Source: Macrostomum lignano (Eukaryota). Taken from it: 64,000 bases of DNA. Position 1 is the first letter of the stretch; every line of letters begins with the position of its first letter. The notes beneath the pieces are model-generated. The model had not been told where the DNA came from. It ran no database searches and saw only the letters and a list, made by a program, of their open reading frames with translations. Position numbers and translations under genes: made by a program. The stretch lies in assembly GCA_002269645.1 (NCBI GenBank), contig NIVC01000497.1, positions 62,001-126,000 on the forward strand, written 5' to 3'. Of this stretch, positions 2,523 through 61,816 are shown piece by piece.

Positions 2523-5150
2523 ATGCAGTTAGTCGGGCTGATGTCGGCCCTCCTTGCCGCCATGGCAGCTGCAGTTTGCGCTGTTCCAAACGACTGCTCG
2601 CGCATCTCCGCCGACCTGACGGAGGGCTCGCCGCCCGACACGCCGGTGGTGAACCTCGGCGACAAGCTCGGCCTGGCGGTCGGCCAGGCGGAATTCGCCC
2701 TGCTCAACGATCGAACGGACGGCCACCTGCTGAGCTTGAACAGCAAGAGCGGCCTGGTGTCTACGCGGATGTCCATCTACCGAGACACCTTGATCAGCTC
2801 GCCTGGACATCATCGGGGCTCTTGCGACCGGAGCGGTTGCGTCGTGGCTATCATGGTGCAGGTGAGCTACGGCGACTCCATCCGGCTCTGCACAGTCAGA
2901 CTGCGTCTCGAGGAGCGCAACAACCACGCGCCAGAGTTCAAAGTGACTTCGCCGATTGTGGAGGTGAGCGAACTGGCCGAGTTGGACACGCGGGTTGGCC
3001 TGAGGCTGGTCGTCACGGACAGGGACTCGCCGAGGTACGGCGTGGCTCGCCTACAGCTGACACCTTTTGACCCGAAGGACACGGGACTTTTTGACGTCGC
3101 GCCGCTAGAGCCGAACGAGAAGGACCATCGAGTGGTGCTGCTGCTGCGAGGGAAGCTGGACAGGGAGACCAAGGCCGAGCACCACATGCTTCTCACAGCG
3201 TTCGACGGCGGCAGTCCGCCGAAGAGTGCATCGCTCAATCTGACAGTTCGAGTCCGGGATGAGAACGACCACGCGCCAGTCTGGGTGACCAAAAACTTTC
3301 GTTTCAATTTGACGGAGAATGCCGAAGGCGGCCAGTTAATAGTGAAACTGGAGGCCACTGACGAAGACGCCGGGCCCAATGGCCGAATAATTTACCTGTT
3401 CAACGATCCGAGGCCGTCGCGCGAAGCGCAGATGTTCTACCTGCACCCTAACTCTGGCGAACTGCAAGTCGCCCACGGCGCTGTGTTGGACTATGAGCGG
3501 ACTAGCGTCTACCGCATCCCCGTGGTGGCCAGGGACCGCGGCGTTGTGCCAAAGCAGATCGAGCAGACCATAATAATCGAGCTGCAAGACTACAACGACA
3601 ATGTTCCGGTGATCAGCGTGCGCGGCCTTCCAGTCAAGCCGGGCGGTGGGCCGCACACGCTGTCGATTCGCGAGAACCAGCCTCCCGGACAGACCATTGG
3701 CTACGTTGTCGCACGCGACGATGACTCCGGGAACAACAGCCACGTTGAGTGCAACCTCGGAAGCCCTGGAGAAGGGAAAATTCGTTTCCGACTGCAACAG
3801 CAGCAGCGCCACAAGCCTCAGGTAGTTTTCAAGCTGATCACGGATGACACATTTGACTGGGAGGTGACGCCAACTGTCCAGGAGACCGTCTGGTGCCACG
3901 ACAACGGTGTCCGAGACTCTCCGCATCGCAGCTCATCACAGTAGTGATTCTGGACGAGAACGACTCACCACCGACTTTCGATCGGCAGGTATTCGAGTTA
4001 GCCTTCGACGAGGAGCAGCAACCAGGTATCCAGATCCATCGGTTTGAGGCAGTCGATCGCGACCAGTCGCCCACTCTGGTCTACTCACTAGACGATGAGG
4101 GCCAGCGCATCGCCACTCTCGGTTCATCGACCGGCGTTCTTAGATCGGCTGTCCGTTTCGACCGCGAATCATGCGACCAGTACAGGTTCAGCGTGCACGT
4201 CACTGATGGCGTGCACTCAGCCAGTGCGGAGGTTCGCCTGACAATTCGAGACGTGAACGATCATGCACCTGAGTGGCACCCGCCATTCACGCTGGAGATC
4301 AAAGAAAATTCGCCGCCAAGTAGTCATGTTGGACGAGTCAACGCCACAGACCGAGACGCCGATGTCAACGGTCAAGTCAAGTTTTTCGTCGGCCACAACC
4401 CCTACTTTGCCATCAGGCCAACTGGCGAGATTTTCACCAAGTCCAACAACCTGGACCGAGAGCGCACGCCCTCCATCCAGCTGAACGTGACCGCCTACGA
4501 CTTCGGGCAGCCGTCGAGGCACCGCTCCACCATCGTGCACGTGACCCTGCTGGACGAGAACGACAACGCGCCGGTGTTCTACTTCCCGTCCCCGGCTAAC
4601 AACCGCCTCAACGTGTCCTGCGACTACGGACCCGACGACGTGGTTGCCAAGGTGATCGCGAACGACTCGGACAGCGGCGAGAACGGCCGGCTAACTTTCA
4701 ACCTGACAGGCAGTGGCCAGGATCATTTCCGCATCAACCCGGACACGGGCGAGCTCAGCCTGGCCAAGTCGCTCGAGTGTGGCGCCTATCAGCACCGATT
4801 CACGCTCACCATCCGCGCCACGGACCGGGGCAGCCCGGCGCAGACGCGCATCGCTACGCTGCTGGTTGCCACCACGCCGAAGCGGCTGGGAGCAGCTGGG
4901 ACTGCCGGCTCCGGCAGCGCCAACGGATTCGGCAGCGACGGCCGGGCGAACTCGGCTGCTGGCAGCGGACGCGGCCCCGACGGAAGCGGCGGAGGCGGTG
5001 GCCTGGGCGATCGGGACTCCAGCCTGGCTGCCATCGTCGGGCTGATCATCGCCACTGCCATCCTCATTGTCATCCTGGTGTTCGCCATCTGCCTGCTGCG
5101 TAGGCGAAACTTTCACCAGCAGACGGACGGGGTCGGAATGGCCGATAGGC
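2523..5150 (+). CDS. Protocadherin (7 extracellular cadherin repeats, delta-like), exon 1: signal peptide, EC1-7 and TM; interrupted by a 1-nt frameshift at about 3911
   Basis: Signal peptide MQLVGLMSALLAAMAAAVCA. Six cadherin linker motifs delimit seven repeats: ERNNHAPEF, DENDHAPVW, DYNDNVPVI, DENDSPPTF, DVNDHAPEW, DENDNAPVF. DRE/DYE and DxDxGxNG motifs are present. TM segment LAAIVGLIIATAILIVILVFAICLL is followed by RRR. ORFs 2523-3944 and 3893-5173 join as DNGV-PRLSAS if one C is added at 3911-3912. Donor GTAAGT at 5151 (phase 1). A single large ectodomain exon is typical of protocadherins. Confidence 0.93.
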
Positions 5151-5747
5151 GTAAGTTGAGGCGACTTTGTTAATCTGCTTCTGGTGACTTGGGGCTCGTG
5201 TGGACATAATTCAGAACCATGACAGCTCTTTGTGTCTGCCTCACTTTGATCTCCGATATAAGCAAGCACAATTTACAATCTATTTTTGTTATAATTGAGC
5301 GCGTTGATGTGAGCTGGCGGGAGACCATTACTGGAGCAGTGATACCTGCAAGTGCAACCCGTACTCAAAAGTGTTTTATTGCTGGCAATTAGAATAAATT
5401 TCCCCCAGAAAAGCAGACTGGATTGCTTTGCATTGGCACTGTTGTCTGTTTTGTCCAGCTGGTTTACGACCTTTACCCCAGTTAACACTCACGGACCTGA
5501 ACGATGGGGAAGTGCCAGTTTTACGAGCAGTTGGAGTCCTGGCTCATTGTTCGATATTTGAGATGACTTTCGTTTACAGTCAGTTTTGCTTTATTGACTG
5601 CTTAAAAGCTCAAAAGGCTTATTGGCTGTAAGGGGACACGGCAATGAGTCAAGATATGTTGTGATTTCATCACCTGAATTTCACATTTTTTTAGTCGGTG
5701 CTCTGCTAACAGTGTGGCGAGTGTTTATGAAGAGTTATTTATCCCAC

Positions 5748-15813: not shown

Positions 15814-16959
15814 TTATGGCGACGTAATGAGCCCAGCCCTGGATCCCGACAGACTCTCGAGCGGCTGCTCAAGAGACCCGACATCAGCTTGTTGTTGGCT
15901 TCTAGAAGCACCAACAGAAGCAGCCGCAGCGGCAGCAGTTCCAGGCAAAGCCGACTGGCCAGCCATCTCAGGCAGAATCTGGCGCATCAAGTCGGTGAAG
16001 TTCAAATAGATGAACAGAATATTTTTCACCACAAAAGCTGACACAAGAGTCAGTGACAGGCTGTACCACAGGTAGAGCCGGATAATGAACAGAGGCAGGT
16101 TGCACAGCAGCACAGAGAACAGCAGGTGCAGCGATCGAACTAATCGACTCTTGGCCGTGGTCAGGTAGCCGAACCGGCTGAACGAGTACACAGACATCAG
16201 GCAGGCTGGAGCCAGCAGTGTGGCCGCGGCAAAAGTCAGAATGCACTCAGTCAGACCCGCTGGCAGGCGTTGACGCGAATTATTCACTAACAGCACGTCG
16301 AGAAAGTCGACAGCGTCCAGCACATCGATGGCAGTTTCCGCTCCGATGCGGAAGATGAACAAATGATTCTTCAGTATGAACGGCGGTCCCAGCAGCAGGG
16401 ATTTCATCAATAGGAATCCTGTCACGCAGCTCAGTGCTCCGGTTGTGCGCAGCAGATTCGAGCCGACATTCCCCCATGCGCCTACTGTTGTACCAAACGA
16501 GTAGTATATAACGATTAGGCGAGCAACCACGCAGGCCTGGTTCAGCAGCCACAGGGCCCAGGCAAATGGAATTTCGCCGGGCTGTTTCGCTTCAAGGAAC
16601 CTCGTGTACTGGCCCCGCCTGTAAAGGTAGGTGTTGACAAAGCCATAGACTAAGGCTCCGATCACGACAATGTCAGCGACAAGGAACCAAAGCCAGGCAA
16701 CGCTCAGACCCGTCACTAAGTAGTAATTGAGCAGTGCGCACTGGACCACGGCCACAAGGCCGCAGACCAGGCAGTGAAAATGGTCGGCGCATTCCTCAGC
16801 AACAGTGGAGAAAGACTGCTGCGATGATGGGGTTGAAGGCCAGGGCAGCGGGTGCTGCTGTAATGGAGGAGCTGTACCTTGAGAGACAGTCGATGGGCCA
16901 GCAGCTTGGCCAGATGGGCCAAAGCCCACCGTTGCAGGGCGTCTAGAAGCTGCTGACAT
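15814..16959 (-). CDS. TMEM121/CECR6-family-like multi-pass membrane protein (381 aa from MSAASRR), single coding exon
   Basis: Open 399-codon ORF with ATG at 16959 and several hydrophobic segments. Recalled family-like motifs: EIPFAWALW, DVLDAVDFLD, NLPLFIIRL, SAFVVKNILFI. The family assignment is from memory, not from a search. Confidence 0.72.
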   Translation of the reverse strand: MSAASRRPATVGFGPSGQAAGPSTVSQGTAPPLQQHPLPWPSTPSSQQSFSTVAEECADHFHCLVCGLVAVVQCALLNYYLVTGLSVAWLWFLVADIVVIGALVYGFVNTYLYRRGQYTRFLEAKQPGEIPFAWALWLLNQACVVARLIVIYYSFGTTVGAWGNVGSNLLRTTGALSCVTGFLLMKSLLLGPPFILKNHLFIFRIGAETAIDVLDAVDFLDVLLVNNSRQRLPAGLTECILTFAAATLLAPACLMSVYSFSRFGYLTTAKSRLVRSLHLLFSVLLCNLPLFIIRLYLWYSLSLTLVSAFVVKNILFIYLNFTDLMRQILPEMAGQSALPGTAAAAAASVGASRSQQQADVGSLEQPLESLSGSRAGLITSP

Positions 16960-18155
16960 TCGTAGCACACTGCATGAAGTAGAGTAGATAGTAAAACAAA
17001 TAGAAAAAAGCAAATATCTAAAAAAGTATCTACACTCAAGATATAAGAATTAGATTCAAATTTTGATAGTTTGAAAACCAAAGTTACAGATGCTACATAA
17101 AATTTTGCAATGCTTTCATTGCACTAAGACCATAATGTTTCTCTATAACTATAAAATATAATAAAAAATTAAGATTTAGATATACATGCATTAAGTGCAG
17201 AATAAGCTATAATAAACTTTAATAAACAATGAAATTGGTCTTTCACTTTTATCTAAAGTTGCTAAATATTAATACATCATAGATTTTAAAATTGGCAATC
17301 AAGTTTTGTGCTTTCAATGCCAATGTTACTTACAACAAATTTAGCATTTTCTCATACTGCCTAAATTTTATATCAACCTCTATAGAAAAGTGTTGGTATT
17401 TAGGCATAATTATATATTTAACTAAAGGGTCACAAGGCCCAGATTATTTCTAGATATAAGGTTAAATAATAATCTATTTTATCATATCCTATCCATAAAT
17501 GATTCGGAACTAATTAGGGCCTAATGCTATCAAAGTAACGATTCTATAGTATATTATACACAACAAGGTAACTTTTTTAATTCTGAAATATTTAATTTGT
17601 CAATGTTTGAGCCAGCTTACTTTTAATGAAAAAAAAATTACTACAAGAGCACCTGAAAAAACTACCTATCAATTATTTTATCAAAGCTTTAAATAAAAGT
17701 ATTATATAAACAAGAAACAAACAAATGTATATAACCACTTTATTACATAGCTGGTTCTTGCCTATAAAAATTTTTTACTAAGTCTATAATGCTAGCTGGC
17801 AATTTTATGATTCCTATTCGCTATCTATAGCTTTACCCTTATAGCGAACTCACACCTATGCTATGGGCTATGGCTATGCAGGATATACTGGTTAGTGGTT
17901 AGTCAGGCAGGTTATAGGTTAGGCCTATATATATTATATAGTATAGTATCACCCAGAATATCAGAAACAGGTTAGAGAACCAATCATTGACTTCGAATGT
18001 CGACAAGTTGAAAAAAGCATTCATAAATTAGCTTGCAATATTCGAAAAAGTGATTTAGTTCTGAATTTTTTTCCGAACAGCAAACAAAAATAGAGTGTGG
18101 GGGAACTGTGAATGTTTTAATATCGATTATTGGGTAGTGTTAAAAGTAAAAAATG

Positions 18156-18853
18156 CAAGGACGACTTAAGTAGAAGGACGGGAAACCTCGTTTCTTAGAA
18201 AATTTTTGAAGGCACTTTTTCCCGAAAAAATACACTGCGGAGATAGGAAATTTTCATTTTTTCAGCACAAAAATTGCTATAACTTTTGATAGGAGGCAGA
18301 TCCAGTGTTGATCTTTTGATATGTTGTGCCTTTTTTATTGCTCTATCGATATTTATAAAGCTTTTCGTTCAGAAAATTAGGATTCTATGTTAATTTTTTA
18401 TTCTGCGTATATTTCCTGTTTCTAAAAATCACAAAAATGCATGACACAGCTCTAATATTTGGTTTTATGAATCTATTTTATCATCTATGTTACGACTATT
18501 TGCTATACAGTCAGGTAAGAAGGATAAAATAGACTCATAAAATCAAAGAGCCAAGCCGTGGCATTCTAATGTATTTCAAGCACAAGACACATTAAAATAT
18601 ACGTAGAATAAAAAATTAACATAGAATCCTAATTTTCTGAACGGAAAGCTTTATAAATATCGATAGAGCAATAAAAAAGGCACAACATATCAAAAGATCA
18701 ACACTGGATCTGCCTCCTATCAAAAGTTATAGCAATTTTTGTGCTGAAAAAATGAAAATTTCCTATCTCCGCAGTGTATTTTTTCGGGAAAAAGTGCCTT
18801 CAAAAATTTTCTAAGAAACGAGGTTTCCCGTCCTTCTACTTAAGTCGTCCTTG
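18156..18853. mobile_element. Non-autonomous foldback DNA transposon (P-like; CAAGG ends, 259-bp TIRs, 8-bp TSD AAAAAATG)
   Basis: 18156-18414 is the reverse complement of 18595-18853, with about 2 mismatches seen. AAAAAATG lies at 18148-18155 and 18854-18861. A weaker inner inverted repeat pairs about 18455-18482 with about 18522-18548. Confidence 0.9.
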
Positions 18854-21953: not shown

Positions 21954-22387
21954 ATGGATGCAAAAGAGATATTGGCAATAAATTTAAAATGCAGTGACCA
22001 TCTCAATACAATTGCTTACCAATGTCCAGAATGTAATTACCTTGGCCTGCGATTTGATTGGCTAGAAGAACATGTCAAGCAAACTCATTTTAATAAATGT
22101 GTTTTACTCCAAATCTTAGAATGCAAAGCCTGCAGCATGAGTACAAATTCGCTTTCTTTGTTAGAACAGCATTCTAAGCTCTGGCATGCTGGCAATGTGG
22201 ACTATGGCATTGTTCACGAAATATTAACTAATCCCCAGCTTATTGGTAGTGGTCACAATGACCTACCAAGCTGTCCAAGCAGCATTGTGAATGCTATGCT
22301 TTGCGACAGCGAGCTGGCGCCAAGGTTGAGGTGCACTTTCTCTGAGCTGCTGGCATGTTCGATTGAGCTGCCTGAACAGGAGGGTTC
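21954..22387 (+). CDS. Exon 1 of ZnF-tandem-AlkB gene: two C2H2 zinc fingers
   Basis: YQCPECNYLGLRFDWLEEHVKQTH and LECKACSMSTNSLSLLEQHSKLWH. Donor GTAAGT at 22388 (phase 2). Confidence 0.8.
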
Positions 22388-22570
22388 GTAAGTGGCTAAT
22401 GTTTTATGAATTATATAATTACACTAGCTCACTAGATATTGTTTGTTATTGTTGCCAAACTATGACAATAAATTAAGCTTTACATTTTAATTGAATAGTT
22501 AGTGAGATTTTTTCTCTTCTGTCCTTTTCTTTTAACTAAGCCGTTAGTCTTGTATTTTTTTTCACCACAG

Positions 22571-24254
22571 AATTTACAAGATCGAAAAGTCCGGTGCCTA
22601 CAATCTGCCCGATCAAGTTTCTTTGCAATCTCACAATTTGCCAATTCGTTTGACGCTTGTGCGCCGCTTCCTTGGTCCAGAGCGAGTCCGACTGTCTCGA
22701 GAGCGCATCCTAAGCAACGCCGAGTGGCCGCAGCCTCCGCCGGCAGGACTTCCAGCCGAACAGCGTCGCTCGGCCAGCAGTTCCAAGCGTCTGGCAGCTG
22801 TTCAGGCGGCTTTCTTGACGCTTCATCTGACTGCAACTGTTGCGGCCTGGCATCCGGAGGAGGCGACGCTGTTGAAATTGCTGATCGAGCAAGTTACTGG
22901 CAGACTGTTCAATTCGGCGATACTATGGTGCTTGCGCCAGCAGCACGCTGTGGATTGGTTTGCTTGGTCTGATTGCACCGTTTCAAATGATAGACCTTTG
23001 CCCGGTACTACCGTTGCTATGCTGTTTCTTGGCGATGGAGAACGTAAACTGCGGCTTCGTCGTTCTAATAGCAAAAGTAAAAGTGAAATTACGCTGCAAT
23101 CGGGCGATCTCTGTCTGATGGACGGCGGCTATTGCTTTGATAATAGCTGGCAGCAGAGGCTTGAGTCGGGCGGTGTCGGTAGCGCCAAGACAGCTCTCGT
23201 GGCCTGTTTCATGTGCTGTCACCATCGCAGAGAATCGGAAGTGCTGCAGCCAGTTGATGTTTCCGAAGCCGAAGGACTGATAGAATGTTCTCCTAAGGCT
23301 GAGACTGAGTCCGAACATGCTGACAATGGTGCGGCGAATTCCGAAGGCGCTTCCTCTGTTCCCAAGATTTCGTTCACTGCTTTATCAGACGCGCTGACTG
23401 TGGCGCTGAATTCGAGTCTATCCCAAGCCGTGTCGGAAGCCGTATCAACCGCTCTGATTGCCAGAGCGGCAGAAGCGCAGGAAGCAGCCTGTCAAGTTGA
23501 TTCTAATGAGCTTGACTGTTTACGGAAGGATGCTGAAAAATCTGCTGCGAGATGCAAGTCTAGTACCGCCGGTTTGCCTCAGATTAACTTACTCCAATTG
23601 ATGTACATGGCGCATGGACCAGTTGAGATTAACTTACCTGGCTCTTATCAACTCGATCGGACCAAGGACGGCGTTCATGCTTGCATCTCGTTTATGCCGT
23701 CATTTTTGAATCGAACTGTTGGCCAAAATTTTATGGAGTCTCTGAAGCAGGATTTGGCCTGGAAACAGCTTACTTCTACTACTAAAGATGGTAAGGAGAG
23801 GCAGGAGCCGAGACTGACCTGTTATGTTGGGCCAGACTTTGAGTATTATGGAAATTCGTTAAAAAACTGCAATGATTGGAACCCAAAACTACAGGATCTC
23901 AAAGAAATAGTTGAGAAAGCAGTTGGTCGTCAGTTCAATGCGTGCATGTGCTATATGTATCGCAATGGACGCGACAGTCTTGGCTGGCACTGTGAGAAAG
24001 AGAAACCGCTAGGTGAGCATCCCTACATTGCCGCTGTGTCTCTAGGTCAAGCTCGTTACCTTGAGTTCTCACGCAAAGGTCGAGAAGATCGCTATGTGCG
24101 ACTACGTTCAGCTCACGGCGATCTTGTCGTCACCGAGGGTGCCATCGAAGACTTGTACATTCACCGAGTACCGAAGGACCCGATGGCGCGTCGGACCAGC
24201 TACGCATTTAGCTTCAGATGGATCGAGCCGACCCACCGAAGCGATGTAGTTTGA
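22571..24254 (+). CDS. Exon 2 of ZnF-tandem-AlkB gene: degenerate AlkB-like domain, acidic/helical linker, ALKBH2/3-like 2OG-Fe(II) dioxygenase domain
   Basis: Polypyrimidine tract plus CACCACAG acceptor ends at 22570 (phase 2, in frame, no stop to 24254), giving 705 aa in total. The C-terminal domain has EPRLTCYVG, W-x-P-x-L, FNACMCYMYRNGRDSLGWHCE, IAAVSLGQAR, HGDLVVTEG, HRVPK and FSFR. An N-terminal copy has WHPEEA..VTGRLFNSAIL..AVDWF..VAMLFLG..SGDLCLMDG..WQQRL. Confidence 0.88.
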
Positions 24255-24558: not shown

Positions 24559-24564
24559 AATAAA
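24559..24564 (+). promoter_or_regulatory. Candidate polyadenylation signal AATAAA for the AlkB-like gene
   Basis: First AATAAA about 305 nt after the stop codon. Support is by position only. Confidence 0.35.
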
Positions 24565-24646: not shown

Positions 24647-24878
24647 AAATTATGGCGGATAGATAGGCCTGTTTTTAATCATTTAACTGGTTTATTTCAA
24701 CAATAGCGTTCTTAGAATTATTTTTCATCCACTCACTATCAGAATAGAAATTTTGAAACTGACAAATTATGGCGGATAGAGAGGCCTGTTTTTAATCAGT
24801 TAACTGGTTTATTTCAACAATAGCGTTCTTAGAACTCTTTTTTATCTACTCACTATTAGAACAGAAGTTTTGAAACAG
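24647..24878. repeat. Diverged direct tandem duplication (2 x about 117 bp)
   Basis: AAATTATGGCGGATAGA...TTTTGAAAC starts at 24647 and again at 24764. Confidence 0.9.
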
Positions 24879-25665: not shown

Positions 25666-26592
25666 AACGCGCCATCCTACTTCATCGAAACTGTTCCTGA
25701 GAAGCGACCTACCACAATGACATCTGCTCAGACTCGGCGAGAGAGTGCCATGCGTCGCTGCGAGGATGAGGCAGAAACATTTTGAAGTCAAAACTATCTG
25801 AGAAATGAGCTATAGCTCTGATGTATACTCGTAGTAGACTGTTTTTGTTTTTTAGAGTCATACAAAGTGCTATTTTTATACAGCTTGACCCAGCAATTTC
25901 TGCTCTGTAGGTAAGCTAATTTCACTCTCTTTTGCTTAATTATCACCTAAAGGTAACCATTTCATTTTTATTTCATATGTTTGCATGGCCTGAAGGGTCG
26001 TAAAGTATTTTTTCGCACTAACAAAACGGAAGTTTTTTGAATAATACAACTTAACCTTGGAGACCTAAAGTTCTGAGTGTTTTGCGTTGAATAGTGCAAA
26101 CCGCATCTTTCTATGACTTTTAGTTAAAAAGTTATCAATCATAGAAATGAAAAAAACGTTGCATTTTCCTATTCATTCACTGCTTTTCTATTGGGTTTTT
26201 ACCCCTAAACTTGTATGCTGCCTAAACTAGTGTCCCTTCCTGGGGAGCGCAGCGACCATAGAGGCTTCCCTAGCTGTGCCCTCGTGTACACATCCACCGA
26301 TGAGAAATCTCTAGCACTCTAACCCCTTCCCTCATTGGCGATCAGTGACACGTTGAGTCGATCGATTTATAGTTGTTGGGGTTGGTACCCTGATGATTAG
26401 CGGATTAGGATATTAATTGGTCAATTTATCCATTTAAATATGCGCAGTGGGCGACTCAGACGCGCGCGCCTTTTTTTAAAAGCGATCTGACCAAACTCAG
26501 AACTTACGACAGTGTAATCGATTCTGTAACCTCGTGCCTGTTATGAGGTGCATGGCGTGAAATGTACTCGTACTTGAAAATTCCTGTACTCA

Positions 26593-27151
26593 GGCGCCGA
26601 AGCTGCTACAAAAGGTGGCGCCGAAGCTGCTACAAAGGTGGTGCCGAAGCTGCTACAAAGGTGGTGCCGAAGCTGCTACAAAGATGGTGCCGAAGCTGCT
26701 ACAAAGATGGTGCCGAAGCTGCTACAAAGGTGGTGCCGAAGCTGCTACAAAGGTGGTGCCGAAGCTGCTACAAAGATGGTGCCGAAGCTGCTACAAAGGT
26801 GGTGCCGAAGCTGCTACAAAGATGGTGCCGAAGCTGCTACAAAGGTGGTGCCGAAGCTGCTACAAAGGTGGTGCCGAAGCTGCTACAAAGATGGTGCCGA
26901 AGCTGCTACAAAGGTGGTGCCGAAGCTGCTACAAAGATGGTGCCGAAGCTGCTACAAAGGTGGTGCCGAAGCTGCTACAAAGATGGTGCCGAAGCTGCTA
27001 CAAAGGTGGTGCCGAAGCTGCTACAAAGGTGGTGCCGAAGCTGCTACAAAGATGGTGCCGAAGCTGCTACAAAGGTGGTGCCGAAGCTGCTACAAAGGTG
27101 GTGCCGAAGCTGCTACAAAGATGGCGCCGAAACTGCTACAAAGGTGGCGCC
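26593..27151. repeat. 23-bp minisatellite (GCCGAAGCTGCTACAAAG(G/A)TGGT)n
   Basis: About 24 units. Confidence 0.97.
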
Positions 27152-27734
27152 CATGCAGAAATTGAGAAGATAGAAGGTCAAGAAATACGAGTATATAAGT
27201 TGTCAAGACCGGATAAAGTGACAGTGCTGTGTTGCCAGTGAATCACGATCTCATGCATTAGCAATAAGTTATACACAAGCTAACTCAAAGATTTCAATAG
27301 AAATTAAACGCTTCTATCCTCTCTCAATTACCGGCACTCATGAGCAGTGTGAAACAAACAATACAAAAGTCCAAGGGCAAGGCTCCTTGCGGAATCCTAT
27401 ATTGAGAGACCGAGTAGAAAATTAAGCCAGGGCTAATGACTCACACTCGCACTGACTTCAAAAGCCAATTCACAATCAGCTGTAGCTGCTGTGAAAGTGA
27501 CATTCGCAACTGCCAGCTGGTTGGCTCAGTAGCTAAACAAACCTCCAGAGCTCGGCAAATACCAGCATTTTCAACCGGATGGTGGAGCCAACACTACCGG
27601 CCTGGTTCTTTCAGAGTTAATGCATCGACAGAGAGACAATGCCTACAGGCATATATGCCTATATGTATGATGGAGAAGGCATATGTCATATTCCTTCCTC
27701 GGATCCAACTCACTTCATTAGAATGTCTGTGCCT

Positions 27735-28126
27735 TCATCACACCTCTTCTCCCTGCATCTCTCTTCTCTATCTCCATCTTCCTGCCTCTCCTTCCATCTC
27801 CATGTCTCTTCTTCCATCTCACTGTCTCTTCTTCCATCTCACTATCTCCCCCTCCATCTCCCTGTCTCCCTCCATCTCACTGTCTCTCCCTACATCTCAC
27901 TATCTCCCCCCCCATCTTCCTGTCTCTCCCTACATCTCTCTGTTTCTCCCTCAATCTGTCTGTTTCTTCCTCCATCTCACTGTCTCTAACTCCATCTCAC
28001 TGTCTCTCCCTCCATCTCACTGTCTCTCCCTCCATCTCATTGTCTCTCCCTCCATCTCACTGTCTCTCCCTCCATGTCGCTGTCTCTCCCTCCATCTCCC
28101 TGTCTCGCCCTCCATCTCCCTGTCTC
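27735..28126. repeat. CT-rich 20-bp degenerate repeat (TCCATCTCACTGTCTCTCCC)n
   Basis: Direct reading. Confidence 0.9.
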
Positions 28127-28142
28127 TGAAACAAGAGAAACA

Positions 28143-28450
28143 AGCCTGATGCTGTCTGTTACAGCCTGATGCTGTCTGTTATAGCCTGATGCTGTCTGTT
28201 ACAGCCTGATGCTGTCTGTTACAGCCTGATGCTGTCTGTTACAGCCTGATGCTGTCTGTTACAGCCTGATGCTGCAGCCTGATGCTGTCTGTTACAGCCT
28301 GATGCTGTCTGTTACAGCCTGATGCTGTCTGTTATAGCCTGATGCTGTCTGTTACAGCCTGATGCTGTCTGTTACAGCCTGATGCTGTCTGTTACAGCCT
28401 GATGCTGTCTGTTACAGCCTGATGCTGCAGCCTGATGCTGTCTGTTACAG
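28143..28450. repeat. 20-bp minisatellite (AGCCTGATGCTGTCTGTTAC)n
   Basis: About 15 units, two of them truncated. Confidence 0.96.
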
Positions 28451-29443
28451 ATAGCTGCTGTCAGCTACTGCCTGCATGCTTCCTGGTGCTATCTATTTAT
28501 CTATTCTGGCTTCGATAGTTATCTGCTTCCTGCGCCTTCAGCTTTTTTGCTGCAGTCTGCTGCCATGGTACTGTCTGCTGATGTCTGCTTCCTGCTGTTG
28601 GGCACACTAGATAGAAATCAAAGATCTAAAAGAATAGTTAGTTTTAAAATATTTTTCATGCCATCATGTGATTACCTCATAAATTCATTTGTTGAAAGTG
28701 GTACAACGTGCAGCAGCGCTCAACATATATTACGAGTACAAATTTGCAGTTGTGCACACACAGCAGAAGCGCAGAACTGTAGCTGTTGTAATTGGATATT
28801 TCTATGCGCAATTTGCTTGCTTTAAAGTTGAAAGACTCCTAGTAAAAAACCATTCAAATTTCATTGGTTGAAATAATGAAAGTAAAATAAGCAGTTATGT
28901 AGTAAAAAAACAAAAACAGTTTCAATCAGCTTACTATGAATAATTTTATTATTTTAATGGAAGAAATGAAGTTACGAATTCATTTTTTATGTTCTTTCTC
29001 CCCGGGGTCCCAATCCAATTCCCTGGGACGTGGGGAGCATTCCCCGACAAGCTCACCGGGGTCAACATTCCTATAGCTACTGGGTGGGATTAGGTAGATT
29101 GGGTCGTCCGCCTTTTCACCCAGAGAAAATGGGTCACAGCCATAGTGTACAGTCACAGATGAGTCGAGCTTCTGCCTTCTACTACTGTATTACTTGGGTT
29201 TTTTAGTATATGGACATACGGCACGGTAGGGGGAGGTGGTGCGAGGTGGCGTGACCGGCGTACGCATTGATTATTGATTGGAGGGGTGGGGCAGACTGGA
29301 AGGGTTGGGGCGGGGCAGGAGGGCGAAAAAAAACACGATTGCACAACACTTGCTGCCTGTCAGCTGATTGACGACCGACCAGACGGCACGCGGTTTCTTG
29401 TCGGAGCCGGCGGCTGTGATAGCGGTGGGGGCGCTTCATAAAA

Positions 29444-29907
29444 CCTAAATTTCACAACGCCTAAAGCACATGACTTCACATCACCTAAATTTCATAACGC
29501 CTAAATTTCACAACTCCTAAAATCTAAATGCAGCCTCCTTCACAACGTCTAAATTTCACATCGCCTAAATTTCACAAGGCCTAAAATTTCTGCACGCTCC
29601 TTCACATCGCCTAAATTTCATATCGCCTAAATTTCATAACGCCTAAAACCGAAAATGCATCCTACTTCATATCGCCTAAATTTCATATCGCCTAAATTTC
29701 ACAACGCCTAAAAATCTACATGCTCTTTCATATCGCCTAAACTTCAATCGCCTAAATTTCACAACACCTAAAACTGAATGTGAAGGAGAGAAGCAAAGAT
29801 TTTAGGCGTTGTGAAATTTAGGCGATGTGAAGGATGCTGCATTTTCGGTTTTAGGCGTTGTGAAATTTAGGCGATATGAAATTTAGGCGTTGTGAAGGAG
29901 GCTGCAT
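29444..29907. repeat. Array of about 15-bp CGCCTAAATTTCAC repeats with an inverted block (foldback)
   Basis: Forward units run 29444-29773. Reverse-complement units (TTTAGGCGTTGTGAAA) run 29800-29907 and mirror 29527-29720, including the AAACCGAAAATGCA spacer. Confidence 0.88.
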
Positions 29908-49699: not shown

Positions 49700-50320
49700 A
49701 AATTCACATCTACTGGGTGGCGGTTAATAATTTTAACAATTCCCTTGCCTTATTTCATAGTTACTAGGCTCGGAACCATTTCTAAGGATAAGTTTCGGGT
49801 TCGGACAGTATCTCCGATGGCTGCAATGTTCATGGGGCTGCCGTAATTAGATTCACAGTTCTTAGCTAATTTCACGGGTATTCGGAGTGCACTATTGGCT
49901 GGAATGATGGCTCTTTCTTGGGTATAAACTCGGCAAACTTTCACTGGTAGGCGGGTACACTGCATGGGTATACAGGTACCTTCATTAAGCACTAGCATTC
50001 CTTTGGCTAGCTTAATGCTTTGGCATTGGGACAGGAAAAATTCTATACCCAGAATATTGTCACAATCAAGTCGGCATAGGAGGAATTCGACCTCTATTTG
50101 GATATCACCAAATTTAACTTGGTTGAACACCTCTCCTAATTGAACTGGGGTACCATCAAATGTACTGATGCTTTTATTGTTGTCTTGAATTTGATCGGTA
50201 TGGAATAGCTTAGACCAGGTTGAACGGCTGAGAAAATTGTTTCTAGCGCCTGTGTCTAGCAAGAAACCAATTGATTCTTTCTCGATAACACCGACAATTA
50301 CGGCTTCGTAGCCTTCTAGC
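49700..50320 (-). mobile_element. Ty3/gypsy retropepsin (aspartic protease) fragment
   Basis: IGFLLDTGARNNFLS carries the DTG catalytic motif, followed by DNILGIEF. Confidence 0.82.
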
Positions 50321-60007: not shown

Positions 60008-61816
60008 CATAGTTGCCACCCAGTTTTTAAAGAAAAGTAGCGCAAGGACTATTTTTTAGCGCAGTTCTTAAAAAATCTCTCATCCTTCCCACAAACCAGT
60101 TTTTCTTTACACTATGACAGACATTTAGTAAATTCGAAAACAAAAATGAATTACATGTACAAGGAAAATTGTTTCAAGTTGCGCAGACAAAAGTAAAAAG
60201 AAGCACCTCAGACAATAAAGACTACAGCATGAAGCTTAGAGTTATAGTTACTACAAACATTCAGTAAATTTTAAGTTGATAAAATGTACAAACATAATCA
60301 TTTCTTCTTCTTCTTTGATTTTGCTTCTTCACTGTCACCATGCCACTTGCGTAGGGCATGCTCCTCCTTATCAGCAAGTGCGAGAATGTCCTGAACCTTC
60401 GTGCGCATTTCGTCAATCTTTGTTTGGGCCTCTGCCTGCTTTTGTTGCTTCTGCTGCTGGAGCTCTTTTCTCCTTTTCAGCAACCAGTCGTCGCTGCTCC
60501 TCCAGTGCTTGCTGAAGTCGCTTCATGGCCTTTTCGTTTTGCTTAGCTCGTCGTCGCTCATCGGCTTTGCTTTTGGCTTGAAAAGCTGTGTCCAGCAGGT
60601 TAGAATCAATAGTGACCTTGGCTGGGCTAGTGCTGTTGCATTTCATCCAAACTTTCACAGCCAAAATCGAGTCCAGCGTAACTTCTCCTAGCCTATTGCG
60701 CTGCTTGGTCAAGTTGTTGGCCACCCATTTCAAAACTCGTTCTCTATCTGCATTACCGTGCAGTATGCAGCAGGCAGCATGACCTAGTTTAGAAATATGA
60801 GGATAATTTTCAGCAGAAAGCTGTGCCCAAAAAGCCTCTGGTGTCTCCTTTGCTTTCTCAGTTGGGCAGGTCAGTCGAAGCCTTGTAGCTTCCAGCCGGA
60901 TATCATCCAGCAAGTCGGCAGAAATGACTGTGCTTATAGCATGCCCAACACGTAGAATAATGTTGTCAAAGTTGAATTCTGATCCCAACATGTATTCAGG
61001 ATCCACAAACTGAAGGCCAGAAAGCACCTTGTTGTTGAAAGGTAAGTAGGTGAACAGTCGACTAATAATTTCAGAAAAGAAGCAGCGAACTGACTTAAAA
61101 AAGCCAATCTGCTCCATCTGACGTAACCGTGCAACAGTCTCACGGGTGGCCGAGCCGATGATTAGATCCTTGTTCATTAGTTGATTGTTGCGATCAGTAG
61201 CCCTGTCAACCAGGTCTGAAAGAGAGCGGCTGTTTTCAACAACTTCACTCCGCATAAAGCAAAGAAGAATGTCACAAAAGCTTTTCCAGCGAATAAGCCA
61301 AGTGGTGAACCTGAGTGCTCTCCCGCTGAAAATTTTTCTCGAATGCTTCGCATCTTGGCAGCACTTGGCTTAAAAACTGGAGCTTGGCTAGCATCTCATC
61401 AGTAAAAGCCAGCTTGATTCGTCGTGCCCGAATTTTGTCCAGTTCTGAGGCACTAGCTTTGTGGCTGAAATGTGACTTGAATTTTATAGTACCTAAACTA
61501 CTACTTCCCTAGATTCCCACTTTAGTACTTTCACTACTTATACCTATAATATACTTATACATAGACTTATCGTATAAGTTTATAGAGAAAATTACAAAAC
61601 TAATGACCCAAAAATAGGAACAAGAATCATTTTGACCTTTCTTACTTTATTTAGAATGAGTTTTTAGCAATAAAAGTAAAAAAAAGATAAGCAAAAAAAT
61701 AATTACTTTTTTGAGCAGACCCAAATTTTTTGAGCAGAACCAAATAAAATTGAGCATTTGAGCAGCTTAATTTTTTTGAGCAATTGCTCAAAATTTGAGC
61801 AGGGGTGGCAAATATG
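60008..61816 (-). mobile_element. Internally deleted hAT DNA transposon with 14-bp TIRs and 8-bp TSD
   Basis: TIRs CATAGTTGCCACCC (60008) and GGGTGGCAAATATG (61803-61816). TSD GGACGAAG / GGACGAAT. The ORF at 60413-61255 contains the hAT dimerisation region FWAQL..YPHISKL..HGNADRER..TKQRNRL..TLDSIL. Subterminal TGAGCA repeats lie at about 61710-61800. Confidence 0.9.

What the first reader, a model, noticed from the sequence alone, without database searches (positions are those of the whole stretch)
21954..24254. Unusual architecture: 2 x C2H2 zinc finger + pseudo-AlkB + AlkB in one 705-aa protein
Seen: the ORF track shows two separate ORFs, but a canonical GT-AG intron (22388-22570, phase 2 at both ends) fuses them without a stop. 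The product has two C2H2 fingers, an AlkB-fold copy lacking its metal ligands (about 22780-23220), an acidic/alanine-rich linker, and a second ALKBH2/3-like domain (about 23675-24220). Established: ALKBH2/3 are single-domain Fe/2OG dealkylases without C2H2 fingers. I do not know of a described protein with this combination, but I could not search. Inference: a sequence- or structure-targeted base-modification enzyme, with ZnFs for targeting, the dead domain as reader or scaffold, and the C-terminal domain as eraser or writer. It could act in epigenetic or transposon control in this repeat-rich genome.
Basis: partly seen in the sequence, partly recalled or inferred. Interest (0 to 1): 0.85.

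Follow-up and report, generated by a model that had tools for sequence, protein, structure and literature searches.

The report
Flatworm zinc-finger protein with two AlkB domains
This is a real, already catalogued but unstudied gene of the flatworm Macrostomum lignano whose protein joins two zinc fingers, a dead copy of an AlkB-type nucleic-acid repair domain and a second ALKBH3-like copy with an altered cofactor pocket; it is an unusual local variant of a known enzyme family, not a new kind of system.

Summary
A GTAAGT...AG intron (22388-22570, phase 2) joins two ORFs into a 705-aa protein. That protein is identical to GenBank PAA82071.1 (Macrostomum lignano Mlig021122g2, "hypothetical protein"), a model from an RNA-seq-based annotation.

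The protein has:
- two C-x2-C-x12-H-x4-H fingers;
- a full-length but dead AlkB-like domain (aa 170-355; ligand positions F275/W277/Q340);
- an Ala/Ser/Glu-rich helical linker;
- an ALKBH3-like domain (aa 491-701).

First, C2H2 + AlkB is not unique. At least two other M. lignano paralogue groups and two proteins from unidentified organisms have it. Only the inserted dead domain looks specific to this gene.

Second, the "live" domain is not a canonical ALKBH3. It has H-x-E...H, and it has lost the near-invariant 2-oxoglutarate-binding Arg (S688; Arg in 134 of 136 relatives) along with other pocket residues. A 350-aa paralogue shares these changes. The two AlkB domains are about 89% identical in protein while their synonymous sites are saturated, so the altered pocket is under selection.

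Catalysis is therefore plausible but unproven. Nothing found here supports an epigenetic or transposon-control role.

Verdict: new variant of a known kind, of moderate interest.

The parts
21954..22387 (+). Exon 1 (ATG to donor). Encodes aa 1-144 plus 2 nt of codon 145: the two C2H2 fingers and a low-confidence spacer.
   Evidence: An in-frame TGA lies 9 nt upstream of the ATG.
22023..22088 (+). Zinc finger 1: C24-x2-C27-x12-H40-x4-H45.
   Evidence: Motif found. Sub-threshold Pfam C2H2 models (zf_C2H2_ZHX 17.6 bits, cut-off 27). Strand-strand-helix in the AF2 model at pLDDT about 70. Conserved in paralogues.
22122..22187 (+). Zinc finger 2: C57-x2-C60-x12-H73-x4-H78.
   Evidence: Motif found. 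zf-C2H2_7th_ZNF462 scores 22.5 bits (cut-off 27) and PF00096 13.8 bits. The BCL11A finger pair in the PDB matches aa 14-82 at E 1e-4. pLDDT 76-81.
22388..22570 (+). Intron of 183 nt, GTAAGT...polypyrimidine tract...AG, phase 2.
   Evidence: The same junction is used in PAA82071.1 and in UniProt A0A1I8J7G8.
22571..24254 (+). Exon 2 (acceptor to TGA stop at 24252-24254). Encodes aa 145-705 as one uninterrupted exon.
22644..23201 (+). Dead AlkB-like domain, aa 170-355. Metal-ligand positions are F275 (22959-22961), W277 (22965-22967) and Q340 (23154-23156). The R-x-N-x-T-x-R strand reads T-A-L-V-A-C-F-M.
   Evidence: Family profile scores 33-37 bits, E 1e-12 to 1e-13. Best PDB sequence hits are ALKBH3 (E 0.03). 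BLASTP against the protein's own C-terminal domain gives E 2e-4. Family-guided AF2 model has pLDDT 76.8 and TM 0.66-0.69 to ALKBH3. Pfam PF13532 does not detect it.
23202..23606 (+). Ala/Ser/Glu-rich linker, aa 356-490, containing long predicted helices (about aa 413-474).
   Evidence: Composition. Helices at pLDDT 72-86. No Pfam hit. No relic of zinc fingers in any frame.
23607..24239 (+). ALKBH3-like domain, aa 491-701. Residues: H618 (23988-23990), E620 (23994-23996), H676 (24162-24164), S688 (24198-24200) in place of the 2OG-binding Arg, and R694 (24216-24218).
   Evidence: PF13532 E 8e-17. ALKBH3 E 5e-29. AF2 pLDDT about 97 with TM 0.94 and rmsd 2.0 A to 8jnk_A. Residue states.
24559..24564 (+). 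First AATAAA after the stop codon (305 nt downstream). A candidate poly(A) signal only.
   Evidence: Not tested.

Best explanation
The locus is Mlig021122g2 of the flatworm Macrostomum lignano. It is an expressed two-exon gene belonging to a lineage-specific family of ALKBH3-like proteins that carry two N-terminal C2H2 zinc fingers.

Compared with the 350-aa family member Mlig024840, this gene has about 370 extra residues between the fingers and the AlkB domain. Those residues hold a second, old and highly diverged AlkB domain that has lost every metal and 2-oxoglutarate ligand, followed by a helical linker.

The N-terminal half (fingers plus dead AlkB) is colinear with a whole short family member. 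The simplest origin is therefore duplication within the family followed by fusion, or insertion, with decay of catalysis in the upstream copy.

Inferred mechanism:
- the fingers and the dead domain act as non-catalytic binding or scaffold modules for nucleic acid or a partner protein;
- the C-terminal domain is the working part. It has the ALKBH3 fold, an intact H-x-E...H metal site and the conserved substrate-side residues (P-R-L-T Arg, E622), so it most likely still binds iron and single-stranded nucleic acid and oxidises alkylated bases of the 1meA/3meC type.

Its co-substrate pocket has been rebuilt (N606Y, D620E, Q671E, R688S, N690A, T692S). 2-oxoglutarate use may therefore be altered or lost.

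Shown: gene structure, domain homologies, residue states, the paralogue family and purifying selection. Inferred: origin by fusion, the role of each module and catalysis.
For: Identity and expression. The window equals NIVC01000497.1 at 100%. The protein is identical to PAA82071.1, and that annotation is built from RNA evidence (PMC5730564).

Domains.

Family. P0155 (Mlig024840g1, 350 aa, two fingers + AlkB), P0157 (468 aa, two fingers + canonical AlkB), and P0005/L004 and P0006 from other organisms all have fingers + AlkB.

Colinearity. Residues 1-400 match P0155 in order: fingers aa 20-80 to 9-67 (E 1e-9), and AlkB aa 238-330 to 215-302.

Uniqueness of the middle domain. In an exhaustive HMMER search of 1.84 billion representative proteins, every one of the top 150 hits outside this gene's own cluster has its best-scoring stretch inside aa 465-705.

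Selection. The C-terminal domain compared with the L003 copies gives pN 0.09 and pS 0.86-0.87, with 88-89% protein and 76-77% DNA identity. The unusual residues E620 and S688 are shared with P0155.

Precedent. OGFOD1/Tpa1p pair a catalytic double-stranded beta-helix domain with a metal-free one thought to serve in binding (PMC4396695).
Against: - No activity data exist.
- The Arg that holds the C5 carboxylate of 2-oxoglutarate is Ser here, while it is Arg in 134 of 136 relatives. Two further pocket residues are also changed. That argues against ordinary 2OG-dependent turnover.
- AF2 without family sequences gave no confident fold for the middle domain (pLDDT below 50). The confident model was guided by AlkB-family sequences, so it is not independent of the profile match.
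- Pfam's generic model misses the middle domain, and both fingers score below Pfam thresholds.
- Constraint on the middle domain could not be measured. The only other copy differs at 3 of 2118 coding bases.
- The linker shows no relic of a second finger pair, so the fusion route is unproven.
- I saw no reads, so the splice evidence is second-hand.
Confidence: 0.55

Rival explanations
1. The whole protein is non-catalytic. Both AlkB-fold domains are pseudoenzyme modules, and the protein acts as a zinc-finger-guided binder (reader, sensor or scaffold) of single-stranded or alkylated nucleic acid. The short paralogue Mlig024840 would then be non-catalytic as well.
For: - The C-terminal domain lacks the near-invariant 2OG-binding Arg (S688), the Asn two positions later (A690) and N606 (Y). 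It also has E for D in the metal triad.
- About 15 otherwise conserved family positions are changed together.
- The changes are fixed in two anciently separated paralogues under strong purifying selection. That fits a new, stable non-standard function.
Against: - H618, E620 and H676 are all kept. H-x-D/E...H is the accepted motif for the superfamily (PMC10816986).
- One other relative (P0057) has H-x-E together with the Arg.
- Substrate-side residues (R559, E622, Y608, R609, D613) are conserved.
- Other 2OG oxygenases hold the C5 carboxylate with a basic residue elsewhere in the fold (my own knowledge). New basic residues do exist in this clade: R555, K584, R598, K621 and R657.
Confidence: 0.3
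2. The extra segment has no function. The gene is a recent-looking accident of duplication or fusion, and the dead domain and linker are tolerated spacer. The protein would then work exactly like the short two-finger AlkB paralogue, or the gene is on its way to becoming a pseudogene.
For: - The middle domain has lost every functional residue.
- AF2 alone cannot fold it.
- No homologue of it was found elsewhere.
- The near-identical second genomic copy (L001) already carries a 1.83-kb retrotransposon fragment inside exon 1.
- Codon GC3 is much lower than in the short paralogue: 0.33-0.55 against 0.76-0.80.
Against: - The domain is old. It is about 20-28% identical to any relative, and less similar to its own C-terminal partner than to distant AlkBs.
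- Despite its age, 372 extra codons remain open and the family's core pattern is still recognisable over the full domain length. A neutral sequence of that age would be expected to have stops and frameshifts; this is an inference.
- The gene is transcribed and spliced according to the annotation.
Confidence: 0.12
3. One reading: a sequence-targeted epigenetic writer or eraser (6mA or 5mC) acting in transposon control.
For: Only circumstantial. The protein has zinc fingers, the window is repeat-rich, and M. lignano retains DNMT1/3 (PMC9246332).
Against: - The catalytic domain is closest to ALKBH3 (E 5e-29, TM 0.94), whose substrates are 1meA/3meC damage, and not to the m6A or 5mC enzymes FTO, ALKBH5 or TET.
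- AlkB-fold enzymes remove or oxidise alkyl groups and are not writers (established knowledge).
- Neither the locus nor the literature links the gene to transposons.
Confidence: 0.03

Closest known systems
Human ALKBH3 (PDB 2IUW, 8JNK, 9NCZ), Fe(II)/2-oxoglutarate dealkylase of 1meA/3meC in single-stranded DNA and RNA
   Same: The C-terminal domain (aa 491-701) shares its fold and about 31-32% identity: E 5e-29, TM 0.94, rmsd 2.0 A. The two His ligands, the P-R-L-T Arg, Y608/R609, D613, E622 and the last Arg of the R-x-N-x-T-x-R strand are all kept.
   Different: - H-x-E replaces H-x-D.
- The first Arg and the Asn of R-x-N-x-T-x-R are Ser and Ala.
- N179-equivalent is Tyr.
- Human ALKBH3 has one domain and no zinc fingers. 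Here there are two fingers, a dead second AlkB domain and a helical linker upstream.
Macrostomum lignano Mlig024840g1 / Mlig002470g1 (PAA90535.1, PAA59263.1), uncharacterised 350-aa two-finger AlkB proteins
   Same: Closest relative. It has the same two-finger N-terminus (35% identity, E 6e-10). Its AlkB domain is 88-89% identical and has the same H-x-E and S-x-T-x-S-x-R pocket.
   Different: It has no middle domain and no long linker. It is intronless, present as a tandem pair 3.5 kb apart, and has GC3 of 0.76-0.80.
Mlig015948g2/016819g1/021096g1 (about 468 aa), and the ENA proteins P0005 and P0006 from unidentified organisms
   Same: C2H2 finger(s) followed by an ALKBH3-like domain.
   Different: Canonical H-S-D and R-I-N-(L/F)-T-F-R motifs, 34-52% identity, and no dead domain.
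OGFOD1 / Tpa1p / Ofd1 ribosomal prolyl hydroxylases (tandem double-stranded beta-helix 2OG oxygenases)
   Same: One catalytic and one metal-free beta-helix domain sit in a single chain. They are thought to have arisen by duplication, with the dead domain kept for substrate or partner binding (PMC4396695). This is a functional analogy.
   Different: A different subfamily (prolyl hydroxylases, not AlkB). The dead domain is C-terminal there and N-terminal here. They have no zinc fingers and are conserved across eukaryotes rather than lineage-specific.

Membership tests
AlkB family (ALKBH3-like) - C-terminal domain aa 491-701 | AlkB-type double-stranded beta-helix fold with nucleotide-recognition lid | tested here: met
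   PF13532 scores 62.6 bits against a cut-off of 31.2. ALKBH3 E 5e-29. AF2 pLDDT about 97, with TM 0.94 and rmsd 2.0 A to 8jnk_A.
AlkB family (ALKBH3-like) - C-terminal domain aa 491-701 | H-x-D...H iron-binding triad | tested here: met
   H618-C-E620...H676. The superfamily motif allows Asp or Glu (PMC10816986). Among the 154 ALKBH3-like relatives, however, Asp is found in 147 and Glu in 3, two of which are this gene's short paralogues.
AlkB family (ALKBH3-like) - C-terminal domain aa 491-701 | R-x-N-x-T-x-R strand that binds 2-oxoglutarate | tested here: not met
   The strand reads S688-Y-A690-F-S692-F-R694. Among relatives the first position is Arg in 134 of 136, the Asn is present in 114 of 136, and the last Arg in 134 of 134. 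Only the last Arg is kept here.
AlkB family (ALKBH3-like) - C-terminal domain aa 491-701 | Fe(II)/2OG-dependent oxidative dealkylation of 1meA/3meC | not testable with these tools
   Needs a biochemical assay.
AlkB fold - middle domain aa 170-355 | Significant sequence similarity to the family over the whole domain | tested here: met
   A custom profile of 154 relatives scores 37 bits, E 1e-13 for one comparison, over profile positions 11-176 of 197. The best of 2000 shuffles scored 6.8 bits. Top PDB sequence hits are ALKBH3, at only E 0.03. Pfam PF13532 gives no hit at E<=10.
AlkB fold - middle domain aa 170-355 | Predicted double-stranded beta-helix structure | tested here: inconclusive
   Without family rows over this region, pLDDT is below 50. 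With 108 AlkB relatives as the alignment, pLDDT is 76.8, pTM 0.77 and TM 0.66-0.69 to ALKBH3. That model was steered by the family alignment.
AlkB fold - middle domain aa 170-355 | Metal triad and 2OG-binding residues | tested here: not met
   H->F275, D->W277 and H->Q340. N->W264 and Y->L266. The R-x-N-x-T-x-R strand reads T-A-L-V-A-C-F-M. The domain is catalytically dead.
C2H2 zinc finger | C-x2-4-C-x12-H-x3-5-H spacing | tested here: met
   Two motifs, at aa 24-45 and 57-78, both C-x2-C-x12-H-x4-H. They are conserved in paralogues.
C2H2 zinc finger | Match to curated C2H2 profiles above threshold | tested here: not met
   The best match is 22.5 bits (zf-C2H2_7th_ZNF462, cut-off 27). PF00096 scores 13.8 bits against 25.2. 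The BCL11A finger pair in the PDB gives E 1e-4.
C2H2 zinc finger | Beta-beta-alpha fold | tested here: met
   The AF2 model shows strand-strand-helix at both motifs, pLDDT about 70-81.
C2H2 zinc finger | Zinc and nucleic-acid binding | not testable with these tools
   Needs an experiment.
OGFOD1/Tpa1p tandem-DSBH oxygenases | N-terminal catalytic prolyl-hydroxylase domain followed by a metal-free C-terminal DSBH domain | tested here: not met
   Here both domains are AlkB-type and the dead one comes first. This is an analogy only (PMC4396695).

The most novel reading that the evidence does not exclude
The Mlig021122/Mlig024840 clade may be an AlkB-fold protein that keeps its metal site but no longer uses 2-oxoglutarate in the standard way. 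It could use another co-substrate, or act as a metal-dependent reader of alkylated bases. In the 705-aa form this module would be coupled to a dead AlkB domain and zinc fingers, making a targeted recognition-and-repair or signalling device. Such a device might have evolved in a flatworm that retains DNMT1/3 and so has endogenous 3mC damage.
Probability: 0.15. Interest if true: 0.7.

Novelty: new variant of a known kind. Interest (0 to 1): 0.4.

Why it matters
AlkB enzymes are well-studied repair and RNA/DNA demethylation enzymes, and all characterised members bind 2-oxoglutarate through the same arginine. This flatworm clade drops that arginine, switches the metal-binding Asp to Glu, and still stays about 89% conserved in protein while its synonymous sites have saturated. 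That makes it a natural experiment on what the AlkB fold can do without its standard cofactor pocket.

The 705-aa form adds a second example, in a different subfamily, of a live oxygenase domain paired with a dead one, as in OGFOD1/Tpa1p. Zinc-finger fusion suggests direct nucleic-acid targeting where mammals rely on partner proteins.

M. lignano has transgenesis (PMC5730564) and published knock-down studies, and it keeps DNMT1/3 (PMC9246332), so these ideas can be tested. The scope is narrow: one lineage-specific gene family with no demonstrated activity.

Tried and rejected
1. Word-indexed protein searches with the full protein, the C-terminal domain and a five-sequence family alignment returned only M. 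lignano's own proteins plus one unrelated AlkB. The candidate lists were probably swamped by low-complexity words. The exhaustive HMMER search was the informative one.

2. Pfam on the isolated middle region gave no AlkB hit. A family-specific profile was needed.

3. AF2 of the full protein gave no usable model for aa 100-415.

4. I tested whether the linker is a decayed second finger pair, by comparing the protein and all three DNA frames with the finger region of P0155. The score was at shuffle level (z 0.1), so the idea is not supported.

5. dN/dS between the window copy and the L001 copy is uninformative, because only 3 coding differences exist.

6. dS for the C-terminal domain against L003 could not be corrected. 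pS is 0.86, above saturation, partly because GC3 differs (0.48 against 0.80). Only the statement that pN is far below pS is claimed.

7. A metagenome scan with the middle domain found no relative.

8. The literature holds no paper on this gene, on C2H2-AlkB fusions or on flatworm ALKBH3.

9. A link to a transposable element was considered, because AlkB domains occur in some viral replicases. The gene sits between ordinary genes (CECR6/TMEM121 upstream) and has no paralogue elsewhere in the window, so this was rejected.

10. The source organisms of P0005 (ERZ25070786) and P0006 (ERZ3792534) could not be identified.
Full report
**What is at the coordinates**

The window is Macrostomum lignano (a free-living flatworm), contig NIVC01000497.1 of assembly GCA_002269645.1. 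A 22.3-kb locus fetched from that contig matches window 11945-34254 at 100%.

Joining 21954-22387 to 22571-24254 gives a 2118-nt reading frame of 705 codons plus stop. The donor is GTAAGT at 22388. The intron has 28% GC, against 37-56% for the coding parts.

The translation is residue-for-residue GenBank PAA82071.1 ("hypothetical protein BOX15_Mlig021122g2, partial"). That model carries three extra N-terminal residues read from just after an in-frame TGA. A 263-aa UniProt fragment (A0A1I8J7G8, "C2H2-type domain-containing protein") also reads across the same junction.

The GenBank annotation of this assembly was built from RNA-seq, a de novo transcriptome and TransDecoder, not from ab initio prediction (PMC5730564). 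The splice therefore has transcript support, though I could not inspect reads myself.

**The four modules**

(i) Zinc fingers. There are two C-x2-C-x12-H-x4-H motifs, at aa 24-45 and aa 57-78.
- They score below Pfam thresholds. The best is 22.5 bits against a cut-off of 27.
- They resemble the BCL11A finger pair in the PDB (E 1e-4).
- They fold as strand-strand-helix at pLDDT 70-81 in the AF2 model.
- They are conserved in paralogues.

(ii) Middle domain.
- Pfam's general AlkB model does not see it.
- Its best PDB sequence hits are human ALKBH3, but only at E 0.03.
- BLASTP against the protein's own C-terminal domain gives E 2e-4.
- To test it properly I built a profile from 154 ALKBH3-like domains returned by the exhaustive search, leaving out this gene's own cluster. 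The middle region scores 37 bits (E 1e-13 for a single comparison) over profile positions 11-176 of 197, which is aa 170-342. The best of 2000 shuffles of the same residues scored 6.8 bits. On the whole protein the profile finds two domains, aa 171-342 and aa 512-698.
- A MAFFT alignment with 108 relatives is colinear through the W-x-Q, (P)R-L, F-N-S, D-W, L-G and L-x-x-G-x-L-x-x-M landmarks.
- Every catalytic position is replaced: H to F275, D to W277, distal H to Q340. The 2OG contacts N and Y become W264 and L266. The R-x-N-x-T-x-R strand reads T-A-L-V-A-C-F-M.
- Structure prediction adds only weak support. With no family rows over this region, AF2 gave pLDDT below 50. With the family alignment it gave pLDDT 76.8 and pTM 0.77, with Foldseek hits to ALKBH3 and ALKBH2 at TM 0.66-0.70. 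That model is not independent of the profile result.

(iii) Linker. It spans aa 356-490 and is rich in Ala, Ser and Glu. It has long predicted helices at pLDDT 72-86, no family match and no trace of decayed fingers in any frame.

(iv) C-terminal domain. It is clearly ALKBH3-like:
- PF13532 scores E 8e-17.
- Human ALKBH3 scores E 5e-29, against E 7e-7 for ALKBH2.
- AF2 gives pLDDT about 97, and the model superposes on ALKBH3 at TM 0.94 and rmsd 2.0 A.

**The "live" domain is not canonical**

The table compares its residues with the 154 relatives.

| Position | Residue here | Residue in relatives |
|---|---|---|
| First His of the triad | H618 | kept |
| Distal His | H676 | kept |
| Acidic ligand | E620 | Asp in 147, Glu in 3 (two are this gene's short paralogues) |
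| First Arg of R-x-N-x-T-x-R | S688 | Arg in 134 of 136 |
| Asn two positions later | A690 | Asn in 114 of 136 |
| Asn that contacts 2OG near the Y-R motif | Y606 | Asn in 139 |

The first Arg of that strand holds the distal carboxylate of 2-oxoglutarate in AlkB enzymes; this is established knowledge, which I did not re-derive here. In all, about 15 strongly conserved family positions differ, many of them around the cofactor pocket.

Substrate-side residues are kept: the P-R-L-T Arg, Y608, R609, D613 and E622. H-x-Asp/Glu is an accepted form of the metal motif in the superfamily (PMC10816986).

These are not random decay. The 350-aa paralogue Mlig024840g1 has the same E and S. Its AlkB domain is 88-89% identical in protein but only 76-77% in DNA. 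Non-synonymous difference is 0.09 per site and synonymous difference is 0.86, which is saturated and inflated by a GC3 shift from 0.48 to 0.80. The remodelled pocket has therefore been preserved for a long time.

**Family context**

An exhaustive HMMER search of 1.84 billion representative proteins found 4047 relatives at E<=0.001. Outside this gene's own cluster, every one of the 150 best has its best-scoring stretch within aa 465-705.

Several of the closest hits have N-terminal C2H2 fingers:
- Mlig024840g1/g2 and Mlig002470g1: two fingers, then a short spacer, then AlkB.
- Mlig015948g2/016819g1/021096g1: two fingers, a Gln-rich spacer and a canonical AlkB with H-S-D and R-I-N-L-T-F-R.
- P0005: encoded on an ENA contig (ERZ25070786) of unknown origin, in three exons, with two fingers and canonical H-S-D and R-I-N-F-T-F-R.
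- P0006: from ENA sample ERZ3792534, with one finger and canonical motifs.

M. lignano also has ALKBH3-like genes without fingers (Mlig032459, Mlig033276).

"C2H2 + AlkB" is therefore the ground plan of a small family that is uncharacterised, to judge from the literature searched. What is peculiar to the window gene is the roughly 370-residue segment (aa 93-464) carrying the dead domain and linker.

**Origin**

Residues 1-400 align colinearly with a whole short paralogue: fingers to fingers (35% identity, E 6e-10) and dead AlkB to AlkB. The dead domain is more similar to distant AlkBs (up to 31 bits) than to its C-terminal neighbour (8 bits), so it is an old copy and not a recent internal duplication.

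The short paralogue occurs as a same-strand tandem pair 3.5 kb apart. This shows the arrangement from which a read-through fusion could arise.

Two routes fit the data:
- fusion of an old, degenerating finger-AlkB gene to the AlkB part of a Mlig024840-type copy; or
- insertion of a diverged AlkB segment between the fingers and the AlkB domain.

I could not separate them. The linker keeps no finger relic, and similarity to the short paralogue resumes only about 25 residues before the AlkB domain.

**How it probably works**

Shown:
- an expressed, spliced gene;
- two finger motifs;
- one dead and one metal-site-intact AlkB domain;
- strong purifying selection on the latter.

Inferred:
- The C-terminal domain binds iron and flipped-out alkylated bases in single-stranded nucleic acid, as ALKBH3 does, and most likely still oxidises them. 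Its use of 2-oxoglutarate must be altered or lost.
- The fingers give direct nucleic-acid or partner targeting.
- The dead domain serves as an extra binding or scaffolding surface, as proposed for the metal-free second domain of OGFOD1/Tpa1p (PMC4396695).

M. lignano retains DNMT1/3 and ALKB2, and DNMTs generate 3mC as a by-product that AlkB enzymes repair (PMC9246332). That gives a plausible, untested reason for an expanded ALKBH3-like family. I put about 0.55 on this reading.

The rivals are:
- About 0.3 that the whole protein is a non-catalytic reader.
- About 0.12 that the extra segment is functionless baggage or the gene is decaying.

**Comparison and novelty**

The C-terminal domain meets the fold and metal-triad criteria of the AlkB family but fails the R-x-N-x-T-x-R criterion. 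I therefore file it as an atypical ALKBH3-like domain and not as an ALKBH3 orthologue of known activity.

The middle domain is an AlkB homologue by sequence and a pseudoenzyme by residues.

The gene model is already public, and the finger-AlkB plan is shared with paralogues. The new points are:
- the recognition of the dead domain, which Pfam misses;
- the tandem dead/live AlkB arrangement;
- the conserved remodelling of the cofactor pocket.

This is a new variant of a known kind and of moderate interest.

Noticed in passing
L001 10369-12196 (contig NIVC01000499.1), corresponding to window position 22312 inside exon 1: The near-identical second copy of the gene (Mlig021122g3, PAA82062.1) differs at 3 coding bases. 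It carries a 1.83-kb GC-rich insertion that ends in (AAG)n and looks like a 5'-truncated non-LTR retrotransposon. It was not run against any family library. GenBank models the insertion as an intron although it has no GT donor, so that copy is probably disrupted.
   Followed up: partly
L003 10016-11065 and 13483-14532 (contig NIVC01000625.1): The short paralogue (two fingers + AlkB, 350 aa) is intronless and present as a same-strand tandem pair 3.5 kb apart (dS 0.046 and dN/dS 0.28 between the two). Its GC3 is 0.76-0.80, against 0.33-0.55 in the window gene.
   Followed up: partly
window 21954-22387 versus 22571-24254: Exon 1 (the fingers) has a clearly lower GC3 (0.33) than the parts of exon 2 (0.46-0.55). 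The two exons may have different histories.
   Followed up: no
window 24647-24876, 26596-27151, 27748-28480 and 29473-29896: Satellite-like arrays lie just downstream of the gene: 117 bp x2, 23 bp x24 (which creates spurious ORFs at 26562-27241), two 20-bp arrays and a 16/65-bp array. The 23-bp array is also present in the L001 copy.
   Followed up: no
window 18156-18414 and 18595-18853: A 259-nt inverted repeat, 99% complementary, with 180 nt between the arms, lies 3 kb upstream of the gene. It looks like a foldback or MITE-like element.
   Followed up: partly
window 2523-5173 (+), 15814-17013 (-), 49750-50262 (-) and 60413-61255 (-): Other coding features in the window are cadherin-repeat ORFs, a CECR6/TMEM121-family gene, a gag-type aspartyl protease fragment and a weak hAT dimerisation-domain remnant.
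   Followed up: partly
Protein P0160 / P0014 (Mlig033276g5, not in the window): Another M. lignano ALKBH3-like protein has a canonical AlkB domain followed by a C-terminal extension of about 220 aa. phmmer reported a second matched stretch in this protein, but my AlkB profile did not detect a second domain.
   Followed up: partly
L004 (ENA ERZ25070786, contig ctg135792l) 1711-2337 and 7551-12024: The unidentified organism's finger-AlkB gene lies among reverse transcriptase, RNase H and integrase ORFs, so that region is retroelement-rich. The organism was not determined.
   Followed up: no
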